From: Asterias rubens
Taxonomy: Eukaryota
Assembly: GCF_902459465.1 (NCBI RefSeq)
Contig: NC_047064.1
Location: forward strand, 2,418,001-2,482,000
DNA: 64,000 nucleotides
Direction: 5' to 3'
This document shows, piece after piece, positions 15,001 to 48,699 of the stretch. Below the pieces are notes generated by a model that worked only from the letters and a program-made list of their open reading frames with translations, did not search any database and was not told where the DNA came from. The first letter of the stretch is position 1; each line of letters begins with the position of its first letter. Made by a program: the position numbers and the translations under genes.

Positions 15001-18000
15001 TTCCGGTACCGTGTTGTTGATTTGCTCTGATCATGGCTGCGCACCATTCCTGCTGCTTTTTTAACCTGGCTAACTCATCCACTGATTGATGCTCACCCAG
15101 GTTTGTTGATTTTCCGGTCGAACACACAACATTGTATGAGCCTGTTACCTTGGTCGACTCATACTGGTGCATTAGGAAAAGTCTGTCCGTGTTCATCTCA
15201 GGCACTTTGTGAGTTGATAAAGCAACTTCTGATTGTATTGTCTCAGATTCAACAGAGGCACGTCCATGTGAGCTGTCACTACTGTGTAATCGCGGTCTCT
15301 TGGTCCAGCCATCGATGGCATCCTCAATGCTCTTTGTGTTTATTCTCTTTCGCTCAGGAGAAAAAGTTGCGCCTTCTGGAAAGGGAACTACGTTCGCTAC
15401 GTGAGGCTGGTCTTCTAAATTGAGTACAGCATTCTCCAGGCACTGTATTGGGGACTCACTGATATTCTCAACGGCAGATGTGCTACCTTCACTGCTGGTC
15501 TCAGTTGCCACAGCAGCGTCAGAGAGTTTTAATGATTCCACACTTTGCTTTCTCTTTGCGCTTATCTGTGAAGGTGCTATTTCATGTTTCGAGCTGTCCG
15601 GTGTTACGTTAGGCGTGTTGTCGTTAAATAAGCCCATACCAGACATCAGGTCGCCTGCATGATGGGGTGCAGGACTTTCAGGAGGTTGAGATTGCTTTGC
15701 TGATTGGGCTTTAGCTGCAGCTGAAAGTAGACTACTTGCTGGGAAGGCACTTCCTTCAAGTGACTGGTTAAATATTTCTTGCAGTGATATATTACCAACT
15801 GGAAGTTTTGGATCTGTTTTTGTGTTGTGCATAGAGCTGGACTTGATGCTATAAGTCGGGTTGCTGTCTTTTGGGGTGACTGAGGTGCTCATTTTATCTG
15901 CTTTAGATTTGTCCACAGGTTTTGTTGACTCAATTGGTGCAGCTTCTTCCGAGTCCTGGCCAGGTACAACAAGGCTCTTTTTCGACCGGTCTTGCATATA
16001 GAAGGCCACATCATTTCTATTGGCAAACAAGGCTGGATTATTGCTCATATTAGCAGCAGTCGAGGAAGCCCTGTTTTGATTATGGTACATGTTGCTGAGT
16101 AATGGAATCACGCTCGGAGAACATCCATCCAGGTGCATGCCGACCATATTCTGTCCGTCCACAACAGGCCCATGTACCTCCCCATGAAAGGGGAATGAGA
16201 AGGAACCATGGTTATGGAGTGTTTGCATTTCATTTGGACTGACGGTAAGTTCACCGCTTGATCCGCTTCTTTTTCTCGACCTTGAAACAGTGTTGTGTGG
16301 ACTTGCAGCAGTAGGTGTGTTCTGTGGTGCTACCTCAGCACCTCGGGTAAACGGTATGTTCGGACAGCGAAGGGTTGGGCTCGAGTGTAGCACCCTTCCG
16401 TCCCAATGTTCAACAGAGCACTGATCAATAGGCGAATGGAGAGATTCCTGGCTTCCCCTGCGTGGGGATGCCTGGCGTGTAAGCTGCTGGTGGTGAAGCA
16501 GAAGCTGCTGCTGCTGGTGCTGCTGCATAAGCTCCTGATGCTGCATGTGCAAGAAGCGCATCTGAGCCTGTCTCTGATGTGACTCGAGGCTGTGCTGCTG
16601 CTGATGCAAGCGATGATCATAAGGGATGGATTCCATTGAAGGCATATGTTTGGTGATGTTTTGCGGATGGTGCTGGTGCCTGCCTTGTTGTAGTGCTAAG
16701 ATCTGCGACACTGAAAGGTTGGGATACTGAAAATCACCGCCAGTCTCGGGTTTCGACTTTGACCTTGCCCTCTTCACTCCTGCTGCATAAAAAACAACAC
16801 AGTAGGAATTTTAGAACAGACCTAGTAAAAGTTACACATCCAATATTCTGTTGACTACTCCTTGGAATTTTCACTTTTTAGAAAAAAGAAAAGAAAAAAA
16901 ATTCATTCAAAAGCATTGTGAACAAATCTAAAGCATACAGTATATACCTTTAAGATTATTTGACAAAACATTTTAATGTACAACCGCACTTTCAACAACC
17001 TGAATTGGGTCATTTTGAGATCATGACATATTGTGTTTAGTAAAAAAAGTTTAGTGTTGAAATGTTTTTCATGACTGCCTAAGGAAAAAACCCCACACCC
17101 AAACACAACAACTTTAGACTTGTTAGGATCACACTAAGTTGGCATTCCATACATATCTCTTTTCTCTTGCTTGGCTTTATCGACAAGTCTTTACAGTGCA
17201 AATTGGTTTTTTTACAATTGAATAGTATGAAATCTGTTAAATCTGTTAAAGTTGATGACAATTAGCATTTTTTGATTCATGTTTTTAATGCCCAGGCTAC
17301 AACTGTAGCAATTTATTATTGCATGGTTTAATAGTGTAACCTTCTTTTGCGATTTTTAATGATACTTTGTTTTTAATTATTCATAAAAAATAAAGAAAAT
17401 TAATAACCAATTTTGTTTATAAATAACCCACTAATTTGTTTTTTTAATTTATTTGCTTTATTTTATTTTCCTTATTTTAATATAGTGGAGGGGAAGAGAG
17501 ACAGGCAACAAGAGAGTGTGATAAATCTTGTCTCTATTAGTTAAAAGGAAGGTACATATTTGGTAATGAAAGCACACAAATTCGTCCAACAAGGGTGTTT
17601 TTTCTTTCATCATTTTCTCGCAACTTCGATGACCAATTGAGCTCAAATTTTCACAGGGTTTTATGCTTATGTTGGGATACACCAAGTGAGAAGACTGGTC
17701 TTTGACAATTACCAAATGTGTTCAGTGCCTAATGAAACTTAAAAAAAATTCAACTTGGAGACTAATACACATGTATACATGTGCATTATGCATAAACAAA
17801 TACTAAACTGTACTCATTGCCATAAAATTACAATACAATACTAGTAAACAGGTATCAAAGTCAAACATCAAAATATCTGATACCGACCTTTGCTTCTCCC
17901 AGGCGCTGCCAAGCCTCCCCCAGGCGGACCGATGTTTGTCAGGCTCTCCTCGTTCCCCTGAAGCCCCGCTGCCATGGCAACTAACTTATGTCTATGCTTG

Positions 18001-30841: not shown

Positions 30842-33389
30842 ATAGCCCCAAGATGAGCAAGCGTTCCTGAGGCTAGATATTTGACTGCCTTCCAAATTCT
30901 ACCAAAGACTTAACGCAATTTGTAACGAGCAGTTTATTAAGCCTTTGGAGGTGTGTCATTGTGCATGCCGCTCACCAACTTATAACCATGTAGAACTGTC
31001 TGCATCATTTCTTCAAATCTTTGGCTACAAAAGCCATGAAAACTTTACTGAACAATTCCACAGATTGTTGGTTGCAGGAATGGGAGCCTACTTCATGGCT
31101 GAATGCACTCATATTTGTTGAATTTGATAAATTAGTATTAAATTCTGTTTTTTTTTGTTATGGTGCTAAACCATCCGTTTATCAAACTAATGTTGTTTGT
31201 TGTGTCAACATTCATCGAAAGCTTGCACTACAAGCACCACCAATAGACTGTGCATATACCATAATTGGGTTCCCACATCATCATCATAATCATTCTCTGT
31301 GGTCCATCAAGGGGGGCGTAGAGCCGCATACAATGCTTTAATGTGCGAAGGAAACATCCCGCTCACTGTAGCAGGGTCAAACATTCAAATTCCAGCGAGA
31401 CATGCACATCCCATTTTAATATTTCTTGCAAACACAAAGCTCTTAATGAGTGTAATCTGCTATAACTTTTGATACTAAATGATGTTTTATCTTTTAAGAA
31501 TACTACAATGTTATTGCGAGATTTGGCAGTTCTAGAAGCCCATCGCTATAACAACCAGGTCAACAAAGATCCAATCTTCGTTCTTCATCGGAAGGAAGGG
31601 GACTCAGAATTTCTCAACATGGTGGCAAATGAAATCAATTTACAGGTACAATGCAGTAACTTTGCATAGGCATCAGTTGGGAGATTTGTCATCTCATTCC
31701 TGTTGGCGATTTTGTTTGAACTTATCACATGTTTTTGTTTGGGTTAAAATGTCTTGAACTTTAAGTCTCCACCCTGGTCCCAGTTTTATAGAACTGCTTA
31801 AGCAGCAAAAGTAGCTAAGCACAACAAAATATGCCTACCTGAATACAATTATCTGCCAAATGTCACAATGTATCATATTTGATTGGTAGTGCACATAAAA
31901 GAACCCAGAACACTTATCGAGTAAGAGTAGAGGTTAACCCGGTGTTTCTGGCTCACACAACAAGCACACTTGTTGACAGGTTTCCTAGTTCACTTGTGAG
32001 GCATCCTTGGTTGAATTTCCAGAGATATATAGCAAAACAATACAAGATGTTTTTTCTCAGAATGAGGGAGAGTCTCCTGAAAGTGTTCATCATACTTTAA
32101 TAGTTCATATGCTGGTTTTTCTAGTTCAGGCTTGTTTGTTATATTGACTTCAGTTGGTGATGTTTCTAAACAAATTTTGTTTTCTGTTTTTCTGTACAGG
32201 GTACTCTAGCTTTACTTACTGCTGGAGATGAGAAGGGTGTTGGTCTTTTCTTGGTTGCTGGGCCAGATGATATCATCAAGGAGGTTGGGCCCAAGTAAGT
32301 TTTAAAACTTAATAAACTCTTGCAAAAATGGCAAAAACTGTTCTTCTAAAGTCTGGCTTTACATCCCATCTGAAGGATAATTCAATAAATGTTAAGTGTC
32401 TTGCTCAAGTGTCAAGACCAGGACTTAAACCCACTCTCCGCTGGTCAGAAATACCAGTGTGCCTAACTGATGTCATGAGCATGTTTGTTTGTACCAAACG
32501 ATTGGACTTGTGTGTTCTAGTCGTCTTGAGAGATGTTGAGAATAAACCATCTGGTTCTTTTAACAGCAAGCACCTCCTTAACAAAGAGATAACGTACATG
32601 ATGCACTGAAAGATTTACCAAATCACTACCCAACCATAAAATTATTTTTTGGTTTAATTTTATTTTATTTAGTTTTTAGTTTAAGTAACTAATTTTTTAA
32701 ATATTTTTTGATCCTGGTGGTTTTGTTTAGTTTTAACTTTTATCTTTCTTGTGGTTTCTAAACTGCTGTTTCTATATTTTGTGTTGTTTTAAAGTATTGT
32801 TTTTATTTAGTGGTAAGCGCTTTGAGGCCTGGCATAAANNNNNNNNNNNNNNNNNNNNNNNNNNNNNNNNNNNNNNNNNNNNNNNNNNNNNNNNNNNNNN
32901 NNNNNNNNNNNNNNNNNNNNNNNNNNNNNNNNNNNNNNNNNNNNNNNNNNNNNNNNNNNNNNNNNNNNNNNNNNNNNNNNNNNNNNNNNNNNNNNNNNNN
33001 NNNNNNNNNNNNNNNNNNNNNNNNNNNNNNNNNNNNNNNNNNNNNNNNNNNNNNNNNNNNNNNNNNNNNNNNNNNNNNNNNNNNNNNNNNNNNNNNNNNN
33101 NNNNNNNNNNNNNNNNNNNNNNNNNNNNNNNNNNNNNNNNNNNNNNNNNNNNNNNNNNNNNNNNNNNNNNNNNNNNNNNNNNNNNNNNNNNNNNNNNNNN
33201 NNNNNNNNNNNNNNNNNNNNNNNNNNNNNNNNNNNGTACCATTTGACATTTTGCAGGGTTGCAGAGTTGCTTGAAGGAAAGGGAGCATGCAAGAACGGAC
33301 GATTTCAAGGCAAGGCCAACAAGATGAGTAAAAGAACCATTGCTGAGGAAACATTACGTCAATACACTGAGAAACTTGCCTCCAGTTAA
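23495..33389 (+). CDS. AARSD1: Alanyl-tRNA editing protein AARSD1 (AlaXp), 12 exons
   Basis: Exons 23495-23533, 25712-25840, 26936-26953, 27361-27502, 27968-28025, 28546-28702, 29139-29255, 29655-29785, 30399-30465, 31499-31645, 32200-32294, 33257-33389, all GT-AG and in phase. Motifs MAFACQ..SY, EDTVLFPEGGGQPDDRGT, RRFDHMQQHS, NLCCGTHV, LLRDLAV..HRKEGDSEF, LEGKG..GRFQGKA. Zn-editing HxxxH and CxxxH are intact. Confidence 0.95.
23960..24810 (-). mobile_element. 5'-truncated, frameshifted LINE (RT C-terminal region; CR1/L2/Jockey-like) in AARSD1 intron 1
   Basis: ORFs 24333-24737 (FNPSKC..YLGV..Y.SLV.PILEYA..WDP) and 24037-24279 (SFFPATIKDWNALP). Confidence 0.85.
25712..25840 (+). CDS. AARSD1: AARSD1 exon 2
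   Basis: LTTKVTSCTPAEL..EDTVLFPEGGGQ. Confidence 0.95.
25901..26288. mobile_element. MITE (TIR about TAGGCCGAGTAAAAAAAAAACATGTTT)
   Basis: Inverted termini, A/T-tract-rich body. Confidence 0.7.
26936..26953 (+). CDS. AARSD1: AARSD1 exon 3 (18-nt microexon)
   Basis: tttag|PDDRGT|gtaag restores the conserved GGQPDDRGT motif. Confidence 0.9.
27361..27502 (+). CDS. AARSD1: AARSD1 exon 4
   Basis: MNDIEVLRITRRG..VDWIRRFDHMQQHS. Confidence 0.95.
27968..28025 (+). CDS. AARSD1: AARSD1 exon 5
   Basis: AQHLVTAIAEAKYGWPTTSW. Confidence 0.92.
28546..28702 (+). CDS. AARSD1: AARSD1 exon 6
   Basis: DLGREKSSIEMD..VNEAIRKQL. Confidence 0.92.
29139..29255 (+). CDS. AARSD1: AARSD1 exon 7
   Basis: VRTRGLPDDHVGQVRIVEIEGIEANLCCGTHVSNLSHLQ. 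Confidence 0.95.
29655..29785 (+). CDS. AARSD1: AARSD1 exon 8
   Basis: SIKLLGAEKGKKNKTNVYFLAGNRVL. Confidence 0.95.
30399..30465 (+). CDS. AARSD1: AARSD1 exon 9
   Basis: CGPEDHPQATEKIQKSLKVANK. Confidence 0.92.
30779..30841. repeat. (ATT)n microsatellite
   Basis: About 20 units. Confidence 0.95.
31499..31645 (+). CDS. AARSD1: AARSD1 exon 10
   Basis: LLRDLAVLEAH..LHRKEGDSEFLNMVANEI. Confidence 0.95.
32200..32294 (+). CDS. AARSD1: AARSD1 exon 11
   Basis: GTLALLTAGDEKGVGLFLVAGP. Confidence 0.93.
32839..33235. other. Assembly gap (run of N) in AARSD1 intron 11
   Basis: About 397 N. Confidence 0.99.
33257..33389 (+). CDS. AARSD1: AARSD1 exon 12 (terminal)
   Basis: VAELLEGKGACKNGRFQGKANKMSKR..TAA. 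Confidence 0.93.
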
Positions 33390-36640: not shown

Positions 36641-37297
36641 AAATCTTCAGAAATACACACAATGATTACAAGTTGGACAGGGACTGTCAAGGTTATACAT
36701 AAAGAATGAAAACTTTCATCATGAGATGTGTAAAACCATGATTAAACATACAATTAAAAACCGCAAGCATTAACATAAAAAAGGTCCACCCTCGGCTTCA
36801 GTAAATGACGAATGAAATATGAAATATAATTATTCTTGTCAGGCTCTAATAAATATAGACTTTTGATTTTCATGACATGCGATTTTCTATAAAGCCGAAG
36901 TTTAGGAAAGCACAACCTTGCAAGATGACTCACTGTCACTCAGATTGGTTCTCATAAAAGACTCAATCTTGCTATTGAAACCCTTGGCACAGAGCGTCAA
37001 GTACCCATGACTTCTTGACAAATCAGTGTAATTACTCCCTTTGTTGGTAAACAAGTTTGCCGGCTCGTGTTTGAAGAAGTCCTAACAATTATAGTCACTG
37101 CTTGGAATCATTGGCTCGTGGCAGATTGTGGGCTTTGGTCATTAACCATCCTATTGAGCCATGCGCCTCAGTAGTTCTGACCATGGAGTGTTCCGACCAA
37201 GCCCCCATCGGGAGCATAGAGTGCGGCCCGAGATCAACGGTATCAATAAAAAGGTGCGACTGTCTTATCTCACCGCCATCCCGAACCAAGACGTTAT

Positions 37298-37340
37298 GGA
37301 TATAAAGTGTGACCGTTTAGATGGGCGCATCACATTTGAT
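37298..37340 (+). promoter_or_regulatory. Candidate TATA box/initiator of nanos A
   Basis: GATATAAAG about 90 nt upstream of the ATG, with CATCACATT about 28 nt downstream, in a block conserved with B/C. Confidence 0.45.
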
Positions 37341-37393
37341 TTGCCCTGCAATCAGTTCACATCAAGTTCTCCCTCAGTCTTAATTTTAGCAAG

Positions 37394-37981
37394 ATGAATT
37401 CCAGTGCGTCTGTCTTCCTTCAAGAAAATGAGCTGGCTATCGAGATGCTCATCAACGAGCCAAGAGAGTTCGATCGCTTCCACGACTACTTCGGTCTTGC
37501 CCGCCTCGTCACTCCAGCTACTCCCGTCTCCAAGCCATTCGTCACTCAAGCTGCTCCCGTCTCCGAGCCACACTTACTCCTGGAACATGGTCAAGAAATG
37601 AAGCAAGATCAAGAATTCACGAAAGACACCGGGTTCCGTCCCTTTACCATCGACGAGCTGTCCCGAGAAAACCGTCCACAGCAAGCAAACCGCTGGGTGG
37701 TTCCCAAGCCGACATGGTGCGTCTTCTGCAAGAATAACGGCGAGAGCGAAGAGGTGTACACATCCCATGTACTAAAGAACAGCCTTGACGTGGTTGCCTG
37801 TCCCAGGCTACGAGCTTACACCTGTCCACTGTGTGGTGTCAACGGAGACACCGCACACACCGTCAAGTATTGCCCATCCAACCTCGGCAGCCTTCATCCA
37901 GCTCCGGTCAAGATTCAACCTCTTGGGGTGTACTTGAGCAGCAAGTTCATCCCCTCTGCAGGAACCAGAATTTCCGTCTGA
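37394..37981 (+). CDS. nanos: Nanos homolog copy A (195 aa, intronless)
   Basis: NOT1-interacting motif-like FDRFHDYFGLARLV and two CCHC fingers CVFCKNNGE..YTSHVLK..CPRLRAYTCPLCG..AHTVKYCP. Confidence 0.96.
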   Translation: MNSSASVFLQENELAIEMLINEPREFDRFHDYFGLARLVTPATPVSKPFVTQAAPVSEPHLLLEHGQEMKQDQEFTKDTGFRPFTIDELSRENRPQQANRWVVPKPTWCVFCKNNGESEEVYTSHVLKNSLDVVACPRLRAYTCPLCGVNGDTAHTVKYCPSNLGSLHPAPVKIQPLGVYLSSKFIPSAGTRISV

Positions 37982-38006
37982 CTCCAAGATGAACATCGTT
38001 TACACC

Positions 38007-38043
38007 GGCTCTTCTCAGAGCCAACACATATTCAAAAAAGAGA
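38007..38043 (+). other. Histone-mRNA-type 3' processing signal (16-nt stem-loop + HDE-like element) in nanos A 3'UTR
   Basis: ACACC-GGCTCT-TCTC-AGAGCC-AACACA..AAAAAAGAGA; stem 38007-38022, 25 nt after the stop; AAAGAGA at 38037-38043. Confidence 0.78.
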
Positions 38044-38765
38044 TTTGTCATGTCTGTCTAAATAAATTTTACAATAAATAGATTATAAGGATCATACCAT
38101 TAAAATAATTAAATGCTTTAACTTTACATCGGGGATGGACTACAGCCAAGACACATAACATAATATTTATTATTACATTATGAAAAAAAATAATGCCGGG
38201 TATAGTAAACTCTGGGCTGCTTTCAATCAGTAAATGTGTGAGAGGGGTTGGCCTTTGAGGGCGGGGGTTACAAAAAGCAACATTAGAGCAAACAAGGGAC
38301 ACAATAGTTTGGGGAACATCATGAATTTAGCAGGATGTACCGTAAGTTTTTTCTTCAATTTTCTTACACCCCATTCTTTGATCTATTTTGGGGGGAAACT
38401 TGCAGGACCCCCGCTATTCCCACAAAAAAAAATTGCATTGACACAATTTTTACATCATTAACTTTTTTTTCTTCCAACCTGTTTAACCATGGTTTAACAC
38501 GCTGCATATTTTGGACGATTGCATCCATTGTTATGCCGGGTGAGTTCTCTTCGGGGCATTTCCCTTTCATGATGTCCCCAACCTATTCAAGCCTTGACTT
38601 CGTATCGTGCCGTCTTCTCGTAATTTGATAAAAACGAGATAACAAACAACATTTCCATTTGTTGCATATTGCTTATTACTGGTATTCAGCTGTTGTTATT
38701 TAAAAGCAATGATCAATGCAAGTTTTTATTCGAAAGCGTAAATAAATGACTGAGCAGCGGCAGAA

Positions 38766-39269
38766 TTTAAAGGCAGTGAACACTATTGGTAAGTGCCAAA
38801 GACAAGCCTTCACAGTTGGTTTATCTCAACATATATGCATATAAATAACAAACCTGTGAAAATTTGAGCTCAATCGGTCATCAAAGTTGCGAGATAATAA
38901 TGAAAGAAGTTGTCACACGAAGTTGTGTGCGTTTAGTTCTAAACTTGAGGTCTCGAAATCAAATTCGTGGAAAATTACTTCTTTCTCGAAAACTATGGCA
39001 CTTCAGGGGGAGCCGTTTCTCACAATGTTTTATACTGATTTTTGGGGTTGAACAAAGAATTGACTAGAGTGGGATTCGAACCAACGACCTCCGGATTAAC
39101 GTGCCGGCGCTCTACCAACTGAGCTATCTAGCCCTATATTGGCGGTGTCCCTATTTTGTCAATATCTTTGTTCGGGGTGCCATACTATACTGTCAACCTC
39201 TCCCCATTACTCGTCACCAAGAAAGGTTTTATGCCAATAATTATTACCAATAGTGTCCACTGCCTTTAA
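38766..39269. mobile_element. MITE family A copy with nested tRNA-like SINE (about 39046-39185)
   Basis: MITE body interrupted after tatact and resumes after tatactatactg; duplicated at 43785-44287. Confidence 0.85.
39046..39185 (-). mobile_element. tRNA-derived SINE-like repeat (cloverleaf head 39133-39061)
   Basis: A-box TAGCTCAGTTGGTAGAGC and B-box GGTTCGAATCC, with a shared non-tRNA tail. Other copies at about 5075-5390, 34700-34800, 36525-36640, 42885-43055 and 44064-44203. Confidence 0.8.
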
Positions 39270-39443
39270 GTGCATGTAAACCCTTCTTGTTTTACAATTA
39301 GTTCCCTTTATATTGACAGTTCAATTGAAATAATTCATCTCAAAATACTTTTACGATAATGATTCAGACTAATTTCCCGTCCACACTCTAAACAAACTCG
39401 CAAAATTTATAAACAAACCGACGAACAAGATTCCTACGTCTGT

Positions 39444-39606
39444 GCAAAGTAATGGTTGACGTAGGCACATTTGCTACATAAATGTTTTCGGTTGCAATTT
39501 TGTCCAGATCAAAACTTTGCGAGCGAAAGTTACAAAGTAATGGTTGACGTAGACATAAATGTTTTCGGTTGCAATTTTGTCCAGATCAAAACTTTGCGAG
39601 CGAAGG
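39444..39606. repeat. Short direct duplication (about 70-80 bp)
   Basis: aaagtaatggttgacgtag..cataaatgttttcggttgcaattttgtccagatcaaaactttgcgagcgaa occurs twice; repeated in the second 5-kb unit. Confidence 0.85.
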
Positions 39607-39643
39607 TTAAATCACAGGAGGGCGGTATTCCGAGAAAGACCGT

Positions 39644-39795
39644 GGGTGCGTTCGTTTAGCTTCCCTGGGTCATCCCCTGTGTGTGACGGTTTTTTTTTCC
39701 AGGACAAACGTGGGTAATTATCTGCACACGTTCGTCCTGGAAAAACAAGTCGTCACACAACGGGGTCGACCCAGGGAAGCTAAACGAACGCACCC
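39644..39795. mobile_element. Small palindromic MITE (TIR GGGTGCGTTCGTTTAGCTTCCCTGGG)
   Basis: Long inverted repeats; duplicate at 44662-44813 and a partial copy at 1-107. Confidence 0.8.
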
Positions 39796-40708
39796 TGGCT
39801 TTATGGAACCAAGTCTTTAAAATTACAGACAAAGTTACATGAAACCCCGGTTTAATAAAAGACTTCGCACGACTTCCACTGGGCTCCTTATTCATAATTA
39901 ATTTCAAGTAGCCTATGTTAATATAACCGGCAATGTGGGAGGGGGTTGGCATTTGGGAAGACGGGAAATTACAAACATTTAAAATTAGAGCAAACAATAA
40001 ACCCTCTAGCTTGGGTGGATAATAAGGGAAAAGCATAATATTGGGACGCGTTCACCGTAACTTTTTTCTTCAATTTTCATCCGTACCCCAAAGGTTTTTA
40101 CATACAATTCCCCCCCCCTCCGGGAAATTTGCATTTCGAAGACCTCCCCCACCTCTCGCTATTCCCACGTACATTGCATTGAAAACACAGAATTAACTTT
40201 TTTGCAACCTGATTTCCCTGTCCTTACTCTATGATTTCAGGAACTGGACACAATTGGTAGTTACTCAAAAAATTGTTAGCATAAAAACTTAATTGTTATT
40301 GATAAATGGAGAGCTGTTGATAAAATAAAACATTGTAAGAAACGGCTCCCTCTGAAGTATCGTAGTTTTCGAAAAAGAGTAACTTTCCACTAAAATAATT
40401 TGTTTATTTGATCTCGAGACCTCAGACCATGGAGCAATTGCTCCATGCTCAGACCCACCCGTACGACTGCCGATCCATCTGAATAAGAAGAAGGACTAAC
40501 GACACCTTTTTTTTTTTTTTAATCATTGTCGGTCGTATTCTATGTGACCCACAAGTTAGAAAGGGGTAGCCAATGGTAACTTAAAAGTGGTGCGTTTATA
40601 AGTTTTGCTCGTCAGAACTGTTTTGAAATCACACTAACTTATATTATTTGTATTCTTTAAAATCGTTATTTGCTTTATTATTTTAAATAATTAGGCAGAC
40701 ATGGCAGA

Positions 40709-40745
40709 TCTCTTTTTGGAATATGTGTTGGCTCTGATAAGAGCC
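40709..40745 (-). other. Histone-mRNA-type stem-loop + HDE-like element in nanos B 3'UTR
   Basis: Minus strand AAACC-GGCTCT-TATC-AGAGCC-AACACA..AAAAAGAGA; stem 40745-40730, 25 nt after the stop. Confidence 0.72.
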
Positions 40746-40770
40746 GGTTTGAACGCTGGTCATCTTGGAG

Positions 40771-41349
40771 TCAGACGGAAATTCTTATTCCTGTAGATGA
40801 GATGAATTTGTTGTTCAAGTAGACCCGAAGAGGTTGAATCTTGACCGGAGCTGGATGAAGGCTGCCGAGGTTGGACGGGCAATACTTGATGGTGTGTGCG
40901 GTGTCTCCGTTGACACCACACAGTGGACAGGTGTAAGCTCGTAGCCTGGGACAGGCAACCTTGTCAAGGCTGTTCTTCAGTACATGGGATGTATACATCT
41001 CTTCGCTCTCGCCGTTATTCTTGCAGAAGACGCACCATGTCGGCTTGGAAACCACCCAGCGGTTTGCTCGCTGTGGGCGGCTCTCTCGGGACAGCTCATC
41101 GATGGTGAAGGGACGGAATCCGGTGTCTGTACTACTGTCTTGATCTTGCTTCATATCTTGACCATCTTTCGGGACGAAGTGTGGCTCGGAGACGGGAGCA
41201 GCTTGTGTGACGAATGGCTCGGAGACGGGAGTGACGAGGCGGGCAAGACCGAAGTAGTCGTGGAAGCGATCGAACTCTCTTGGCTCGTTGATGAGCATCT
41301 CGATGGCCAACTCATTTTCTTGAAGGAAGACAGACCCGCTGGAATTCAT
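40771..41349 (-). CDS. nanos: Nanos homolog copy B (192 aa, intronless)
   Basis: Same NIM and CCHC fingers; about 24 substitutions plus a 3-aa indel versus copy A by manual alignment. Confidence 0.96.
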   Translation of the reverse strand: MNSSGSVFLQENELAIEMLINEPREFDRFHDYFGLARLVTPVSEPFVTQAAPVSEPHFVPKDGQDMKQDQDSSTDTGFRPFTIDELSRESRPQRANRWVVSKPTWCVFCKNNGESEEMYTSHVLKNSLDKVACPRLRAYTCPLCGVNGDTAHTIKYCPSNLGSLHPAPVKIQPLRVYLNNKFISSTGIRISV

Positions 41350-42129
41350 CTTGCATATAAATTTTAGCTTAAGACTGAGAGATGACTTGATGTGAACTGA
41401 TTGCGGGGCAAATCAAATGTGATGACCACTCACTAAACGGCCACACATTTTTATCCATAACGTCTTGGTTCGGGTTGGTGTTTGAAGACAATAGGGACTC
41501 CTCGATGGCGGTGAGATAAGACAGTCTCACCTTCTTATTGATACCATTGATCCCTGGCCGCAGTCAATGCATGATTGCTCCCGATGGGGGCTTGGTTGGA
41601 ACACGGTCGGAACTACTGAGGCGCATGGCTGAATGGGATGGTAATGACCAAAGCCCACAACCTGCCACGAGCCAGTGATTCCAAGAAGTGGCTATAGTTA
41701 GGACTTCTTCAAAGACGAGCCGGCAAACTTGTTAACCAACAAAAGGGAGTAATAAAGCAATCTTGGATATGAAAGACTAAATCAATGACATGATTGGGTC
41801 TTAACTCATCTGAAAAAAACCCCAATAGGCCTACATCAAAGATTGTTATCAAGCCTACTTCGACTATCTTTGCGCAGGAGATGATCAGCGGACTTGAAAC
41901 GGGCGGGAACTCCTTCCCGTTTTTGTGGCGAAAATCCCCTAAATACGAAATATTTATGTACGGAATAACTTACCGTTTGGTATTATAAAGTGAACTAACT
42001 GGTTAAAGTAAGCTACCATAGACTCAGAAAAATGTGAGCGTTCTTTTTGCATTGTCAATCGGTATTGACACAATATCTTTGTTCGGGGTGCCAGTCAGAA
42101 GCCATACAACCGTTAACTGCCGTTTTTTT

Positions 42130-42885
42130 GTTCTTAATCTGAAGCCAAGGACTCACTTAACGGTAGATCATTTCAAACAAGTTGGTTGGCTCCCAGTCCA
42201 GAACCGGATTGATCAATTGAAACTATGTAGTATATTTCGTATCTTGACTTCCTTGGCTCCGGATTATTTTAAAGATTTTTTTCAACTGACAAGTAGTACT
42301 CGCTTCTATAACACCCGATCAAATCACTTTTCTTTTGATATTCCCCATCATCACAGTTATGGTCAACACTCCTTCCGAGTTTCTGGGGCAAAGTTATGGA
42401 ATAAACTTCCCATCATGCTCCGGAACACAAATTCATCCCTAGCCAAATTTAAAAAAACTCTCAAACTGCATTACTTTGATAAGTTGCAGCTCCAGGAGGA
42501 TGCATTGTTTGTAGTCGGTTAATTTATTCTTTTTTTTCATTAGAACAGTACTCGTGGTGACACAGTGGCCGGGCCAGGTGACACGAATCAATTTGTTTGT
42601 TGTTGGGTGTCTTGGTCGCCTATTCCATTTGTTTTATTTCATGTGCAATTTTCTAGTCATAGTTTTATACTTGTATTTTAATGTGTCTTCAGTGTTTCTG
42701 CATTTTTATTTTGTATAGAGGACCACAATGGAAATAAGCTTATTTCAGCTTTTTTGTGTTATCCTCGACAATTCCTCAGATTCAAATGTCTTTTCCCTTG
42801 TATTTTTTATCTGTTTTTGTCCAATTGTTGTATTTTAAAGAATTCTGTGGAGATTGTCTAATAAACAAACAAACAAACAAAGCCA
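42130..42885 (+). mobile_element. LINE (L2/Crack-like) 3' fragment with (ACAA)n tail
   Basis: GWLPVQNRIDQLKL..SFRVSGAKLWNKLP..FKKTLK, then a 3'UTR ending aataaacaaacaaacaaac; duplicated at about 47156-47911. Confidence 0.8.
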
Positions 42886-45730
42886 GGGATCACACCCAAA
42901 TTACGATACAACCTGGGAAGCGGCAGCCAGGGGATCACCTTAAGGGGATGCGACTTTTTGTTTCAGATATCAATGTAAACCACAAGGGAAACTGACTGGG
43001 TAAATTTTGAAATGATTTTTGGGGTTGAACAAAGAATTGACTAGAGTGGGATTCACACTATGGAGCTGGTCACATAAATCTTATTTTCAATGTTTAAAGC
43101 ATGTTTAAACATGGAAGAAGGACGGTGTGGGTCTAACTTTTTTTGACACAACGAGTGACGTTACGAAACTTTTGGCACAACCCTCATAGATAAATGGTCA
43201 ACAGATGGCGCACTTGTTTTTCGTTCGGATATGATTCAAAGGATTTTTAATTGAGTGTTTTGAAGTGTCGTTTCGCTAGATACTGATGTACATGTATAAC
43301 TATTGTAAAACAAAACAAGAAAAACTAAATTAAAGTCAATTGAACTACTTACGACGGAATTGTGGACAAGCATTACTTTTCTTACACCCCATTCTTTGAT
43401 CTATTTTGGGGGGAAACTTGCAGGACCCCCGCTATTCCCACAAAAAAAAATTGCATTGACACAATTTTTACATCATTAACTTTTTTTTCTTCCAACCTGT
43501 TTAACCATGGTTTAACACGCTGCATATTTTGGACGATTGCATCCATTGTTATGCCGGGTGAGTTCTCTTCGGGGCATTTCCCTTTCATGATGTCCCCAAC
43601 CTATTCAAGCCTTGACTTCGTATCGTGCCGTCTTCTCGTAATTTGATAAAAACGAGATAACAAACAACATTTCCATTTGTTGCATATTGCTTATTACTGG
43701 TATTCAGCTGTTGTTATTTAAAAGCAATGATCAATGCAAGTTTTTATTCGAAAGCGTAAATAAATGACTGAGCAGCGGCAGAATTTAAAGGCAGTGAACA
43801 CTATTGGTAAGTGCCAAAGACAAGCCTTCACAGTTGGTTTATCTCAACATATATGCATATAAATAACAAACCTGTGAAAATTTGAGCTCAATCGGTCATC
43901 AAAGTTGCGAGATAATAATGAAAGAAGTTGTCACACGAAGTTGTGTGCGTTTAGTTCTAAACTTGAGGTCTCGAAATCAAATTCGTGGAAAATTACTTCT
44001 TTCTCGAAAACTATGGCACTTCAGGGGGAGCCGTTTCTCACAATGTTTTATACTGATTTTTGGGGTTGAACAAAGAATTGACTAGAGTGGGATTCGAACC
44101 AACGACCTCCGGATTAACGTGCCGGCGCTCTACCAACTGAGCTATCTAGCCCTATATTGGCGGTGTCCCTATTTTGTCAATATCTTTGTTCGGGGTGCCA
44201 TACTATACTGTCAACCTCTCCCCATTACTCGTCACCAAGAAAGGTTTTATGCCAATAATTATTACCAATAGTGTCCACTGCCTTTAAGTGCATGTAAACC
44301 CTTCTTGTTTTACAATTAGTTCCCTTTATATTGACAGTTCAATTGAAATAATTCATCTCAAAATACTTTTACGATAATGATTCAGACTAATTTCCCGTCC
44401 ACACTCTAAACAAACTCGCAAAATTTATAAACAAACCGACGAACAAGATTCCTACGTCTGTGCAAAGTAATGGTTGACGTAGGCACATTTGCTACATAAA
44501 TGTTTTCGGTTGCAATTTTGTCCAGATCAAAACTTTGCGAGCGAAAGTTACAAAGTAATGGTTGACGTAGACATAAATGTTTTCGGTTGCAATTTTGTCC
44601 AGATCAAAACTTTGCGAGCGAAGGTTAAATCACAGGAGGGCGGTATTCCGAGAAAGACCGTGGGTGCGTTCGTTTAGCTTCCCTGGGTCATCCCCTGTGT
44701 GTGACGGTTTTTTTTTCCAGGACAAACGTGGGTAATTATCTGCACACGTTCGTCCTGGAAAAACAAGTCGTCACACAACGGGGTCGACCCAGGGAAGCTA
44801 AACGAACGCACCCTGGCTTTATGGAACCAAGTCTTTAAAATTACAGACAAAGTTACATGAAACCCCGGTTTAATAAAAGACTTCGCACGACTTCCACTGG
44901 GCTCCTTATTCATAATTAATTTCAAGTAGCCTATGTTAATATAACCGGCAATGTGGGAGGGGGTTGGCATTTGGGAAGACGGGAAATTACAAACATTTAA
45001 AATTAGAGCAAACAATAAACCCTCTAGCTTGGGTGGATAATAAGGGAAAAGCATAATATTGGGACGCGTTCACCGTAACTTTTTTCTTCAATTTTCATCC
45101 GTACCCCAAAGGTTTTTACATACAATTCCCCCCCCCCTCCGGGAAATTTGCATTTCGAAGACCTCCCCCACCTCTCGCTATTCCCACGTACATTGCATTG
45201 AAAACACAGAATTAACTTTTTTGCAACCTGATTTCCCTGTCCTTACTCTATGATTTCAGGAACTGGACACAATTGGTAGTTACTCAAAAAATTGTTAGCA
45301 TAAAAACTTAATTGTTATTGATAAATGGAGAGCTGTTGATAAAATAAAACATTGTAAGAAACGGCTCCCTCTGAAGTATCGTAGTTTTCGAAAAAGAGTA
45401 ACTTTCCACTAAAATAATTTGTTTATTTGATCTCGAGACCTCAGACCATGGAGCAATTGCTCCATGCTCAGACCCACCCGTACGACTGCCGATCCATCTG
45501 AATAAGAAGAAGGACTAACGACACCTTTTTTTTTTTTTTTTTAATTATTGTCGGACGTATTCTATGTGACCCACAAGTTAGAAAGGGGTAGCCAATGGTA
45601 ACTTAAAAGTGGTGCGTTTATAAGTTTTGCTCGTCAGAACTGTTTTGAAATCACACTAACTTATATTATTTGTATTCTTTAAAATCGTTATTTGCTTTAT
45701 TATTTTAAATAATTAGGCAGACATGGCAGG

Positions 45731-45767
45731 TCTCTTTTTGGAATATGTGTTGGCTCTGATAAGAGCC
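45731..45767 (-). other. Histone-mRNA-type stem-loop + HDE-like element in nanos C 3'UTR
   Basis: Same as B; stem 45767-45752, purine element 45737-45731. Confidence 0.72.
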
Positions 45768-45792
45768 GGTTTGAACGCTGGTCATCTTGGAG

Positions 45793-46371
45793 TCAGACGG
45801 AAATTCTTATTCCTGTAGATGAGATGAATTTGTTGTTCAAGTAGACCCGAAGAGGTTGAATCTTGACCGGAGCTGGATGAAGGCTGCCGAGGTTGGACGG
45901 GCAATACTTGATGGTGTGTGCGGTGTCTCCGTTGACACCACACAGTGGACAGGTGTAAGCTCGTAGCCTGGGACAGGCAACCTTGTCAAGGCTGTTCTTC
46001 AGTACATGGGATGTATACATCTCTTCGCTCTCGCCGTTATTCTTGCAGAAGACGCACCATGTCGGCTTGGAAACCACCCAGCGGTTTGCTCGCTGTGGGC
46101 GGCTCTCTCGGGACAGCTCATCGATGGTGAAGGGACGGAATCCGGTGTCTGTACTACTGTCTTGATCTTGCTTCATATCTTGACCATCTTTCGGGACGAA
46201 GTGTGGCTCGGAGACGGGAGCAGCTTGTGTGATGAATGGCTCGGAGACGGGAGTGACGAGGCGGGCAAGACCGAAGTAGTCGTGGAAGCGATCGAACTCT
46301 CTTGGCTCGTTGATGAGCATCTCGATGGCCAACTCATTTTCTTGAAGGAAGACAGACCCGCTGGAATTCAT
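45793..46371 (-). CDS. nanos: Nanos homolog copy C (192 aa, intronless)
   Basis: Identical to B except one V/I change (PFVTQ/PFITQ). Confidence 0.94.
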   Translation of the reverse strand: MNSSGSVFLQENELAIEMLINEPREFDRFHDYFGLARLVTPVSEPFITQAAPVSEPHFVPKDGQDMKQDQDSSTDTGFRPFTIDELSRESRPQRANRWVVSKPTWCVFCKNNGESEEMYTSHVLKNSLDKVACPRLRAYTCPLCGVNGDTAHTIKYCPSNLGSLHPAPVKIQPLRVYLNNKFISSTGIRISV

Positions 46372-47155
46372 CTTGCAAATAAATTTTAGCTTAAGACTTA
46401 GAGATGACTTGATGTGAACTGATTGCGGGGCAAATCAAATGTGATGACCACTTACTAAACGGCCATACTTTTTATCCATAACGTCTTGGTTCGGGTTGGT
46501 TTTTGAAGACAATAGGGACTCCTCGATGGCGGTGAGATAAGAAAGTCTCACCTTCTTATTGATACCATTGATCCCTCGCCGCACTCTATGCATGATTGCT
46601 CCCGATGGGGGCTTGGTCGGAACACGGTCGGAACTACTGAGGCGCATGGCTGAATGGGACGGTAATGACCAAAGCCCACAACCTGTCACGAGCCAGTGAT
46701 TCCAAGCAGTGGCTATAGTTAGGACTTCTTCAAACACGAGCCGGCAAACTTGTTAACCAACAAAAGGGAGTAATAAAGCAATCTTGGATATGGAAAGACT
46801 AAATCAATGACATGATTGGGTCTTAACTCATCTGAAAAAAAAAAAACCCAATAGGCCTACATCAAAGATTGTTATCAAGCCTACTTCGACTATCTTTGCG
46901 CAGGAGATGATCAGCGGACTTGAAACGGGCGGGAACTCCTTCCCGTTTTTGTGGCGAAAATCCCCTAAATACGAAATAATTATGTACGGAATAACTTACC
47001 GTTTGGTATTATAAAGTGAACTAACTGGTTAAAGTAAGCTACCATAGACTCAGAAAAATGTGAGCGTTCTTTTTGCATTGTCAATCGGTATTGACACAAT
47101 ATCTTTGTTCGGGGTGCCAGTCAGAAGCCATACAACCGTTAACTGCCGTTTTTTT

Positions 47156-47911
47156 GTTCTTAATCTGAAGCCAAGGACTCACTTAACGGTAGATCATTTC
47201 AAACAAGTTGGTTGGCTCCCAGTCCAGAACCGGATTGATCAATTGAAACTATGTAGTATATTTCGTATCTTGACTTCCTTGGCTCCGGATTATTTTAAAG
47301 ATTTTTTTCAACTGACAAGTAGTACTCGCTTCTATAACACCCGATCAAATCACTTTTCTTTTGATATTCCCCATCATCACAGTTATGGTCAACACTCCTT
47401 CCGAGTTTCTGGGGCAAAGTTATGGAATAAACTTCCCATCATGCTCCGGAACACAAATTCATCCCTAGCCAAATTTAAAAAAACTCTCAAACTGCATTAC
47501 TTTGATAAGTTGCAGCTCCAGGAGGATGCATTGTTTGTAGTCGGTTAATTTATTCTTTTTTTTCATTAGAACAGTACTCGTGGTGACACAGTGGCCGGGC
47601 CAGGTGACACGAATCAATTTGTTTGTTGTTGGGTGTCTTGGTCGCCTATTCCATTTGTTTTATTTCATGTGCAATTTTCTAGTCATAGTTTTATACTTGT
47701 ATTTTAATGTGTCTTCAGTGTTTCTGCATTTTTATTTTGTATAGAGGACCACAATGGAAATAAGCTTATTTCAGCTTTTTTGTGTTATCCTCGACAATTC
47801 CTCAGATTCAAATGTCTTTTCCCTTGTATTTTTTATCTGTTTTTGTCCAATTGTTGTATTTTAAAGAATTCTGTGGAGATTGTCTAATAAACAAACAAAC
47901 AAACAAAGCCA
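47156..47911 (+). mobile_element. Duplicate of LINE fragment 42130-42885
   Basis: Identical peptide in ORF 47060-47548. Confidence 0.8.
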
Positions 47912-48699
47912 GGGATCACACCCAAATTACGATACAACCTGGGAAGCGGCAGCCAGGGGATCACCTTAAGGGGATGCGACTTTTTGTTTCAGATATCAAT
48001 GTAAACCACAAGGGAAACTGACTGGGTAAATTTTGAAATGATTTTTGGGGTTGAACAAAGAATTGACTAGAGTGGGATTCACACTATGGAGCTGGTCACA
48101 TAAATCTTATTTTCAATGTTTAAAGCATGTTTAAACATGGAAGAAGGACGGTGTGGGTCTAACTTTTTTTGACACAACGAGTGACGTTACGAAACTTTTG
48201 GCACAACCCTCATAGATAAATGGTCAACAGATGGCGCACTTGTTTTTCGTTCGGATATGATTCAAAGGATTTTTAATTGAGTGTTTTGAAGTGTCGTTTC
48301 GCTAGATACTGATGTACATGTATAACTATTGTAAAACAAAACAAGAAAAACTAAATTAAAGTCAATTGAACTACTTACGACGGAATTGTGGACAAGCATT
48401 ACTTTTATAAAAGGCTCTTTTCCGATCATGCGAATCCTAAGGACCCGGCATTGCGAGAAGATTTTTCCCATTTAAAAAGATCCGAAACATAGCAATTTTT
48501 TGTTTTGTGCACACATGTGTTTATCGAACGCATCCCATCCATCTCATCACGCTTTCACCACCAACGTCTCAAGTCAAGCCCGAGTACAGTTCTTTGGATT
48601 GCAAATTTGACTGTGTATCCTCAACATTCAACATACATTTCCACAATTACTGGTTGTAGTCTCGTATTCCTCAAAACTTAGACGTATTAAGAGGCAGAA

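What the first reader, a model, noticed from the sequence alone, without database searches (positions are those of the whole stretch)
37040..46800. Three-gene nanos cluster with histone-gene-like architecture
Seen: three compact, intronless nanos genes within 10 kb. A and B point towards each other (tail-to-tail), and B and C are tandem. A-vs-B homology covers only about 350 bp upstream, the CDS and about 100 bp of 3'UTR, a self-contained cassette of about 1.05 kb. Established: histone genes using U7 processing are intronless, short and clustered. Inference: the cluster may be amplifying a zygotically or maternally high-output nanos cassette. Alternatively, a nanos ORF may once have captured a histone-gene 3' end.
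Basis: partly seen in the sequence, partly recalled or inferred. Interest (0 to 1): 0.72.

Follow-up and report, generated by a model that had tools for sequence, protein, structure and literature searches.

The report
Sea-star nanos genes with histone-type ends
A sea star has two or three small copies of the germ-cell gene nanos side by side, and each ends in the signal that normally ends only histone messages. Sea stars of two distant groups keep this signal, which points to an undescribed way of controlling a germ-line gene.

Summary
There are three intronless nanos ORFs: A on the + strand, B and C on the - strand. A and B converge. B and C lie in a 5.02-kb tandem duplication. A/B homology is a 1.03-kb cassette.

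Each gene carries a histone-type stem-loop plus purine-rich downstream element 25 nt after its stop codon. Rfam scores are 39.7, 32.7 and 31.1 bits; real histone genes scanned here score 33-41.

New here:
- The same signal follows all 12 sampled genes of one nanos clade (the window's three genes, Asterias, Patiria, Acanthaster and two unnamed contigs).
- It is the only conserved 3'-flank block at dS above 1.
- It is absent from the sea-urchin, brittle-star and sea-cucumber nanos genes sampled and from the sea-star nanos1-like paralogue.
- It most resembles H2B-type histone signals.

So "capture of a histone 3' end" is supported, and the capture is ancient. "Amplification for high output" is not supported: B/C is a very young copy-number variant, probably polymorphic.

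I could get no RNA evidence. One paper implies that read-through poly(A) forms exist in Patiria.

The scan had already flagged the stem-loop on this same window. On other DNA of this genome it found histone-type signals only on Penelope-like elements, not on nanos.

The parts
31491..31657 (+). exon of the upstream neighbour AARSD1 (tRNA_SAD family)
   Evidence: blastn match at 77-80% to the tRNA_SAD genes that precede nanos in Acanthaster L003 and Patiria L005
37037..37393 (+). conserved upstream region of nanos A (promoter plus predicted short 5'UTR)
   Evidence: 90.5% identical to the B upstream region and 90% to A. amurensis L001, while synonymous sites differ by 23% between species
37301..37306 (+). 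TATA-like box of A, with an initiator-like CATCACATT about 30 nt downstream
   Evidence: motif scan; conserved in B, C and L010. The start site is predicted, not shown.
37394..37981 (+). nanos A coding sequence, 195 aa, uninterrupted
38007..38022 (+). histone-type stem-loop of A (6-bp stem, loop UCUC), 25 nt after the stop
   Evidence: Rfam RF00032 at 39.7 bits, gathering score 34; folds as predicted
38034..38043 (+). purine-rich downstream element of A (contains AAAGAG)
   Evidence: complementary to the universal UCUUU box of U7 (PMC5054213)
38061..38078 (+). two AATAAA hexamers 39 and 51 nt after the stem
   Evidence: present only in the Asterias-type copies
40771..41349 (-). nanos B coding sequence, 192 aa
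40730..40745 (-). stem-loop of B (loop UAUC)
   Evidence: Rfam 32.7 bits
40709..40717 (-). downstream element of B
40674..40679 (-). AATAAA 51 nt after the B stem
41350..41746 (-). conserved upstream region of B
45793..46371 (-). nanos C coding sequence, 192 aa, one residue different from B
45752..45767 (-). stem-loop of C
   Evidence: Rfam 31.1 bits
45731..45739 (-). downstream element of C
46372..46767 (-). conserved upstream region of C; holds most B/C differences
38359..43380 (.). tandem duplication unit 1 (holds B, a tRNA-Asn-like SINE, a hairpin repeat and other repeat fragments)
43377..48406 (.). tandem duplication unit 2 (holds C); overlaps unit 1 by 4 bp (TTTT)

Best explanation
The window holds the AARSD1-linked locus of a sea-star-specific nanos subfamily. 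Its genes are minimal units: about 0.35 kb of constrained promoter, an intronless CDS of about 0.58 kb, and, 25 nt after the stop, a complete histone-type 3' processing signal. That signal is an SLBP-type stem-loop followed 12-15 nt later by a U7-type purine element.

Inferred: the signal was captured once, before the Forcipulatacea/Valvatacea split, from an H2B-type histone gene or from a mobile element that carries such a signal. It has been kept by selection because at least part of the nanos pre-mRNA is cleaved there by the U7/SLBP machinery. That would give short transcripts (predicted about 0.7 kb) without a poly(A) tail. Read-through to downstream poly(A) sites would give a second form.

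The cluster itself is ordinary gene-family dynamics. A and B are an older convergent pair (dS 0.15). B and C come from a very young 5.02-kb tandem duplication that is probably polymorphic.

Shown: the anatomy, the conservation, the clade restriction and the likeness to real histone signals. Inferred: use of the signal in vivo, the donor, and the biological purpose.
For: Signal present in the window: RF00032 hits follow all three stops (39.7, 32.7, 31.1 bits).

Calibration: real H4, H3, H2A and H2B genes on metagenome histone repeats score 33.4-40.8 bits in the same test.

Breadth: the same stem-loop plus AAAGAG-containing element follows A. amurensis nanos2-like and nanos3-like, two Patiria genes, three Acanthaster genes, a Logan contig (which is cut off before the downstream element) and a Tara contig. 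That makes the stem-loop 12 of 12 and the element 11 of 11.

Conservation: anchored alignment shows this block is the only conserved part of the 3' flank. The stem is invariant. Loop positions 1 and 3 are U in 11 of 12, and only loop position 2 varies freely. CDS dS between the superorders is 1.0-1.2.

Clade restriction: the genes with the signal form one clade with 100/100 support. No signal was found at nanos of S. purpuratus, Amphiura or Holothuria, nor at the A. amurensis nanos1-like gene.

Poly(A) signals: there is no AATAAA or ATTAAA within 400 nt after the stem in either Patiria gene, in A. amurensis nanos3-like, or in Acanthaster b.

Likeness to histone signals: the AACA tail and spacer resemble H2B signals, scoring 12-16 of 28, the best or near-best match.

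Synteny: AARSD1 followed by nanos is shared with Acanthaster and Patiria, and the convergent pair is shared with Acanthaster.
Against: I obtained no RNA evidence. The runs offered as RNA behaved like DNA, with intergenic depth equal to genic depth.

The Asterias-type copies have AATAAA 39-56 nt after the stem.

A P. miniata single-cell study, which I take from memory to use oligo-dT capture, had to lengthen the PmNanos 3'UTR annotation. This implies polyadenylated read-through transcripts (bioRxiv 10.1101/2022.02.04.479164).

B and C score just under Rfam's gathering cut-off.

A. amurensis nanos3-like is annotated with a 10-residue first exon 7 kb upstream. An intron is unusual next to a U7-type end.

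Confidence: 0.6

Rival explanations
1. The stem-loop is kept only as an SLBP-binding regulatory element inside ordinary polyadenylated nanos mRNAs, for storage, translation or decay control. U7 does not cleave there.
For: AATAAA hexamers lie close behind the signal in the Asterias-type copies. The PmNanos 3'UTR had to be lengthened in a single-cell study whose capture I take to be oligo-dT. Drosophila maternal histone mRNAs are polyadenylated in an SLBP-dependent manner (PMC11997800 abstract).
Against: The downstream purine element is needed only for U7 recruitment. It is conserved as strictly as the stem-loop, at the right distance, in 11 of 11 genes where the flank is available. Several genes have no poly(A) hexamer within 400 nt.
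Confidence: 0.2
2. One reading: the cluster is an amplification of a self-contained cassette for high nanos output, in the manner of histone gene arrays.
For: The cassette is self-contained and has been copied more than once. Several sea stars have 3-4 genes of this clade.
Against: There are only two or three copies, in mixed orientation, with spacers of SINE and other repeats. In two other DNA runs, contigs run from the unit end straight into the right flank, and only the C-type variants are seen. That implies one copy there. In the probable assembly sample, unit depth is only 1.3-1.45 times the flank depth. Patiria has a single gene beside AARSD1.
Confidence: 0.1
3. The signal is a neutral relic of a Penelope-like element tail (hammerhead plus histone-type signal) that landed behind nanos, and it has no function for the gene.
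For: Metagenome contigs show abundant tails of this form: a CTGAAGACGAG...CGAAAC motif followed by the same stem-loop, AACA tail and AAAAGAG element. Earlier notes of this scan describe thousands of such tails in this genome. Tail-to-nanos flank scores reach 15 of 28.
Against: No hammerhead family hit with E up to 10 in 36800-47000, and only 25 nt separate the stop from the stem. A neutral relic would not survive intact in 12 of 12 genes at dS above 1 while all surrounding flank is randomised. Such a tail remains possible as the donor, but not as a functionless relic.
Confidence: 0.05
4. Gene C is not a separate paralogue. The B/C pair is an assembly mosaic of two haplotypes of one gene.
For: All B/C substitutions lie in 40524-41953, while 3.2 kb of neutral flank is identical. 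Each copy carries about 8 private derived changes, as two alleles would. The C-type variants are the ones seen in two other runs. Depth is 1.3-1.45 times the flank, not 2 times, and the variant ratio is 175:86 at 41444.
Against: In the short-read graph of run X7, one contig ends at 38388 and the next starts exactly at 38359. That is a k-1 overlap at the first duplicated base, which requires a second left context for that 30-mer in the raw reads, i.e. the tandem junction. Depth fits three unit copies per diploid genome better than two.
Confidence: 0.15

Closest known systems
3' ends of replication-dependent histone genes (stem-loop bound by SLBP, downstream element bound by U7 snRNP; Rfam RF00032)
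   Same: A 6-bp GGCUCU/AGAGCC stem, a 4-nt U-rich loop, an A/C-rich tail, and a purine element with AAAGAG 12-15 nt after the stem. The signal lies 25 nt after the stop of an intronless ORF. Scores are in the range of real histone genes.
   Different: The ORF encodes the RNA-binding zinc-finger protein Nanos, not a histone. Copy number is 2-3, not an array. Use of the signal in vivo is not shown. [quoted passage not shown]
Sea-urchin nanos2 with its 3'UTR control element GNARLE
   Same: An intronless germ-line nanos gene whose restriction to germ cells depends on its 3' end (10.1101/2022.08.12.503758).
   Different: Sea-urchin nanos2 has a 3'UTR of about 450 nt recovered by RACE (PMC6600436). 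The S. purpuratus nanos locus scanned here has no histone-type signal. The sea-star genes form a separate clade.
Penelope-like element tails that join a minimal hammerhead to a histone-type end signal
   Same: The same stem-loop, the same AACA tail and an AAAAGAG element on a non-histone transcript.
   Different: Those are dispersed repeats with a hammerhead motif directly upstream. The nanos genes have no hammerhead, are single-locus cellular genes, and keep the signal at a fixed distance from the stop codon.
Histone variant genes with two 3' ends, such as H2A.X (from memory, not checked here)
   Same: A stem-loop signal followed by poly(A) signals, allowing both a tail-less and a polyadenylated mRNA from one gene.
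   Different: Those are still histone genes. For nanos, dual use is only inferred, from hexamers and from one remark on a longer 3'UTR.

Membership tests
Nanos (Pfam PF05741, zf-nanos) | C-terminal double CCHC zinc-finger domain | tested here: met
   84.4, 85.9 and 85.9 bits against a cut-off of 27, full-length match 1-53 of 54
Nanos (Pfam PF05741, zf-nanos) | N-terminal NOT1-interacting motif | not tested
   FDRFHDYFGLARLV near the N-terminus resembles the motif as I recall it. No model was run.
Histone-type 3' end (Rfam RF00032 plus downstream element) | 6-bp stem with two G-C pairs at its base, 4-nt loop with U at positions 1 and 3 | tested here: met
   A, B and C and 8 of 9 relatives; one Acanthaster gene has A at loop position 1
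Histone-type 3' end (Rfam RF00032 plus downstream element) | score at or above Rfam's gathering cut-off (34 bits) | tested here: inconclusive
   A scores 39.7 (met). B scores 32.7 and C 31.1 (just under). Real H2B genes scanned the same way score 33.4-37.2, so the cut-off does not separate them.
Histone-type 3' end (Rfam RF00032 plus downstream element) | purine-rich element complementary to the U7 5' region, about 12-15 nt after the stem | tested here: met
   AAAGAG is present at +13 to +15 in all 11 genes whose flank is available. It pairs with the universal UCUUU box. The sea-star U7 itself was not available.
Histone-type 3' end (Rfam RF00032 plus downstream element) | mature mRNA ends a few nt after the stem and has no poly(A) tail | not testable with these tools
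   No RNA run held the gene. The runs laid behaved as DNA.
Replication-dependent histone gene | encodes a core or linker histone | tested here: not met
   The ORFs are Nanos.
Histone-type tandem gene array | many head-to-tail units of regular period | tested here: not met
   Two units only, plus one inverted copy. The spacers are repeats.
Young segmental tandem duplication (copy-number variant) | two adjacent near-identical units with a defined junction that is present in raw reads | tested here: inconclusive
   The units and the 4-bp junction overlap are clear. A contig break exactly at 38359 implies the junction in run X7, but no junction-spanning record was listed, and depth is 1.3-1.45 times the flank.

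The most novel reading that the evidence does not exclude
Sea-star nanos mRNAs are true substrates of the U7/SLBP pathway, which would make them the first non-histone cellular gene family known to use it. Their messages would lack a poly(A) tail. They would then be gated by SLBP availability or the cell cycle, and would be immune to the CCR4-NOT deadenylation that Nanos itself directs at its targets. This would give sea stars a different post-transcriptional route from sea urchins for restricting a germ-line determinant.
Probability: 0.5. Interest if true: 0.9.

Novelty: new variant of a known kind. Interest (0 to 1): 0.75.

Why it matters
Histone mRNAs are taught as the only cellular mRNAs that end in a stem-loop instead of a poly(A) tail. 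A developmental regulator that has carried the full signal across sea-star superorders would break that rule. It would also offer a natural experiment on what the pathway can do outside chromatin supply.

For germ-line biology, it suggests why nanos mRNA behaves differently in sea stars (inductive germ line) and sea urchins (inherited germ line). Both groups are laboratory models, so the idea can be tested directly with reporter injections and 3'-end mapping.

For the cluster itself the message is sobering. The copy number is ordinary gene-family turnover, not a histone-like array.

Tried and rejected
1. RNA evidence. The run search by the A cassette returned six runs of guessed kind. When laid, X1 and X2 covered intergenic DNA at the same depth as the genes and X6 covered only repeats, so they say nothing about transcripts.
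2. Logan contig L010. It ends 11 nt after the stem and starts 332 nt before the ATG. That fits neither a clean U7 cut nor a poly(A) site, and could be a graph break between paralogues, so I did not use it as evidence.
3. Conserved tRNA between the convergent genes: rejected. The window has a tRNA-Asn-like sequence inside a very high-copy SINE, while Acanthaster and Patiria have tRNA-Ala.
4. Gene conversion from A as the source of the B/C differences: rejected. There are 8 sites where B matches A and 8 where C matches A, interleaved. At most sites one copy keeps the state shared by A, A. amurensis and L010.
5. Hammerhead next to the nanos stem-loop: none found with E up to 10.
6. Tying the metagenome histone and Penelope-type contigs to this species by shared repeats: no megablast hit, so their hosts stay unknown.
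7. ILF2 downstream: Pfam on ten flanking ORFs gave nothing, so this is not verified.
8. Papers on sea-star nanos (PMC4943673) and on sea-urchin GNARLE (PMC3641670) are not held. Four full-text searches found no paper that links nanos to a histone stem-loop. That is not proof that none exists.
9. Species. The cassette is only 84-87% identical to A. amurensis L001, with no flank homology. L001 is therefore a paralogue, or the window comes from another genus.
Full report
**What is there.** The stretch 37040-46800 holds three uninterrupted ORFs:
- A: 37394-37981, + strand, 195 aa
- B: 40771-41349, - strand, 192 aa
- C: 45793-46371, - strand, 192 aa

All three match Pfam zf-nanos over its full length, at 84-86 bits against a cut-off of 27.

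A three-way alignment and the repeat table show that A/B similarity begins near 37037 and ends near 38066. That covers 357 bp upstream (90.5% identical), the CDS (dS 0.147, dN/dS 0.42) and 85 nt after the stop (86%). Outside these limits the sequences cannot be aligned.

**The 3' signal.** Rfam's histone 3' stem-loop model hits directly behind each stop:
- A: 38002-38048, 39.7 bits (gathering score 34)
- B: 40705-40750, 32.7 bits
- C: 45727-45772, 31.1 bits

There are no other hits in the 64-kb window. In A the stem is 38007-38022, 25 nt after the stop. It is followed by AACA, an 11-nt spacer and the purine run at 38034-43 that contains AAAGAG. B and C have the same layout, with loop UAUC instead of UCUC.

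As a calibration I scanned real histone repeats found in a metagenome search. There, H4, H3, H2A and H2B genes score 33.4-40.8 bits, and one H2B falls under the cut-off. The slightly low scores of B and C are therefore no argument against them.

**Relatives.** The closest named proteins are sea-star Nanos proteins. I fetched the loci of nine relatives.

The signal is present behind every gene of the same clade:
- A. amurensis nanos2-like (34.4 bits) and nanos3-like (39.2)
- two Patiria miniata genes (36.7 and 39.3)
- three Acanthaster genes (31.9, 34.4, 32.5)
- a Logan contig and a Tara Oceans contig

Anchored on the stem, the 3' flanks share only one block: C, the stem-loop, A(A/G)CA, a variable spacer and an AAAGAG core. 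Everything else is randomised. The stem is invariant. Loop positions 1 and 3 are U in 11 of 12 genes and position 2 is free.

Synonymous divergence between the window genes and the Patiria or Acanthaster genes is 1.0-1.2. Asterias belongs to Forcipulatacea and the other two to Valvatacea. A block that survives this divergence in every paralogue is under selection.

**Where the signal is absent.** No such signal lies at the nanos genes of S. purpuratus, Amphiura filiformis or Holothuria leucospilota, nor at the A. amurensis nanos1-like paralogue.

In a maximum-likelihood tree the signal-bearing genes form one clade with 100/100 support on a long stem. The other echinoderm Nanos proteins lie outside it. 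Within the clade, paralogues group by lineage. That means either repeated local duplication or concerted evolution.

**Where the signal came from.** A pattern scan of metagenome contigs for the stem-loop with an A(A/G)CA tail and AAAGAG gave 33 loci of two kinds.

The first kind is histone repeats with H4, H3 and H2B on one strand. In these, H2B alone has the AACA tail and a CATTTCCC spacer before AAAGAGAGA; H4 and H3 have ACCA and H2A has ACCG. The nanos flanks score best, or close to best, against H2B (12-16 of 28), with some overlap with H4 and with one element tail.

The second kind is tails of a dispersed element in which a CTGAAGACGAG...CGAAAC motif directly precedes the same signal. This matches what earlier notes of this scan describe as Penelope-like tails in this genome.

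Both H2B genes and such tails are possible donors, and I cannot decide between them. The nanos genes show no hammerhead.

**Does the signal work?** This is inferred, not shown. In favour of use in cleavage:
- The downstream element has no known role except U7 recruitment, yet it is conserved as strictly as the stem-loop and at the canonical distance.
- It pairs with the universal UCUUU box of U7 (PMC5054213).
- Both Patiria genes, A. amurensis nanos3-like and Acanthaster b have no AATAAA or ATTAAA within 400 nt.

Against exclusive use:
- The Asterias-type genes have AATAAA 39-56 nt after the stem.
[quoted passage not shown] If its capture was oligo-dT, as I assume, polyadenylated read-through forms exist.

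My reading is dual 3'-end formation, with the histone-type cut being the reason the block is conserved (confidence 0.6). The main rival is an SLBP-binding role without cleavage (0.2). The runs offered as RNA turned out to be DNA-like, so I could not test this.

**The cassette.** A TATA-like box (37301-37306) and an initiator-like CATCACATT about 30 nt further on are conserved in A, B, C and L010. They predict a 5'UTR of about 65 nt and a transcript of about 0.7 kb if it is cut after the stem.

The same limits of about 1.1 kb bound the similarity to A. amurensis L001 (L001 9560-10674). There the upstream region is 90% identical while synonymous sites differ by 23%. The cassette is thus a constrained functional unit, not merely the footprint of one duplication.

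Compactness and lack of introns are not special to it. The sea-urchin and brittle-star genes are also intronless without having the signal, whereas the sea-star nanos1-like and the sea-cucumber gene have an intron.

**The cluster.** An AARSD1 exon lies at 31491-31657. AARSD1 followed by nanos on the same strand is shared with Acanthaster and Patiria. Acanthaster also has a second, convergent gene 2.3 kb away, so the A/B layout may be old.

B and C are different. The two units (38359-43380 and 43377-48406, sharing TTTT) are identical over 3.2 kb of repeat-rich flank, and all 21 substitutions fall in 40524-41953. Each copy has about eight private derived changes relative to A, A. amurensis and L010. 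This is the pattern of two alleles rather than of conversion from A.

Evidence from the DNA runs (all):
- In X7, the probable assembly sample, a contig ends at 38388 and the next starts exactly at 38359. That implies the tandem junction is in the raw reads.
- Unit depth in X7 is 201-237 against 164 for the flank, and the two variants at 41444 stand at 175:86. This fits three unit copies per diploid genome.
- In two other runs, contigs pass from 43380 straight into unlike sequence, and only the C-type variants appear.

I conclude that the third gene is a young duplication, probably heterozygous and polymorphic. The differing patch is either an allelic conversion tract or an assembly mosaic. This does not support amplification for output.

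**Verdict.** The histone-like trait is real but lies in the 3' signal, not in the cluster layout. The signal is an old, clade-wide feature of sea-star nanos genes. I found no description of it in four full-text searches. The decisive step is 3'-end mapping of nanos RNA without oligo-dT.

Noticed in passing
window 9395-16777 (-): One open reading frame of 2460 aa without a stop. It is rich in S, E, Q and D, has no Pfam match, and contains a run of repeats of the form CEPVKQD. It is probably a giant exon of a disordered nuclear protein.
   Followed up: partly
window 38750-39350 and 43770-44370: A tRNA-Asn(GTT)-like sequence (56 bits) sits inside a repeat whose summed contig depth is about five orders of magnitude above single-copy in all DNA runs. 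This is a very abundant tRNA-derived SINE, not a plain tRNA gene.
   Followed up: partly
window 39644-39795 and 44662-44813: A 152-nt near-perfect hairpin (arms 69 nt, 88% paired) with weak plant-miRNA-like Rfam hits far below their cut-offs. It looks like a MITE-type foldback repeat.
   Followed up: no
window 42034-42522 and 47060-47548 (+): A 162-aa ORF with no Pfam match, next to high-copy sequence. It is probably the tail of a retroelement ORF carried along in the duplication.
   Followed up: no
L022 882-1075, L033 2177-2369, L047 2139-2331: Metagenome histone repeats (H4-H3-H2B) each carry a full U2 snRNA gene (175-186 bits) inside the repeat unit.
   Followed up: no
L018-L050 (e.g. L019 2280-2400): Many contigs of one metagenome project carry a hammerhead-like CTGAAGACGAG...CGAAAC motif directly followed by a histone-type stem-loop and downstream element. 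This agrees with the Penelope-like tails noted elsewhere in this genome.
   Followed up: partly
L003 18811-19317 and 19520-19561: The third Acanthaster nanos gene loses the reading frame inside the zinc-finger domain, yet keeps an intact stem-loop and downstream element at the spacing expected for a full-length gene. The second gene lies mostly in an assembly gap, which I left as it is.
   Followed up: partly
L004 10001-10030 and 17133-17753: A. amurensis nanos3-like is annotated with a 10-residue first exon 7 kb upstream, although the main ORF has its own in-frame ATG. It has a different promoter from the A/B cassette.
   Followed up: partly
window 38050-38057, 40696-40703; L001, L004; H2B and element tails in L019, L022, L047: A CATG-containing block about 27-32 nt after the stem recurs in the forcipulatid nanos genes, in H2B genes and in the element tails. 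It may extend the U7 pairing region. The A/B cassette ends just after it.
   Followed up: no
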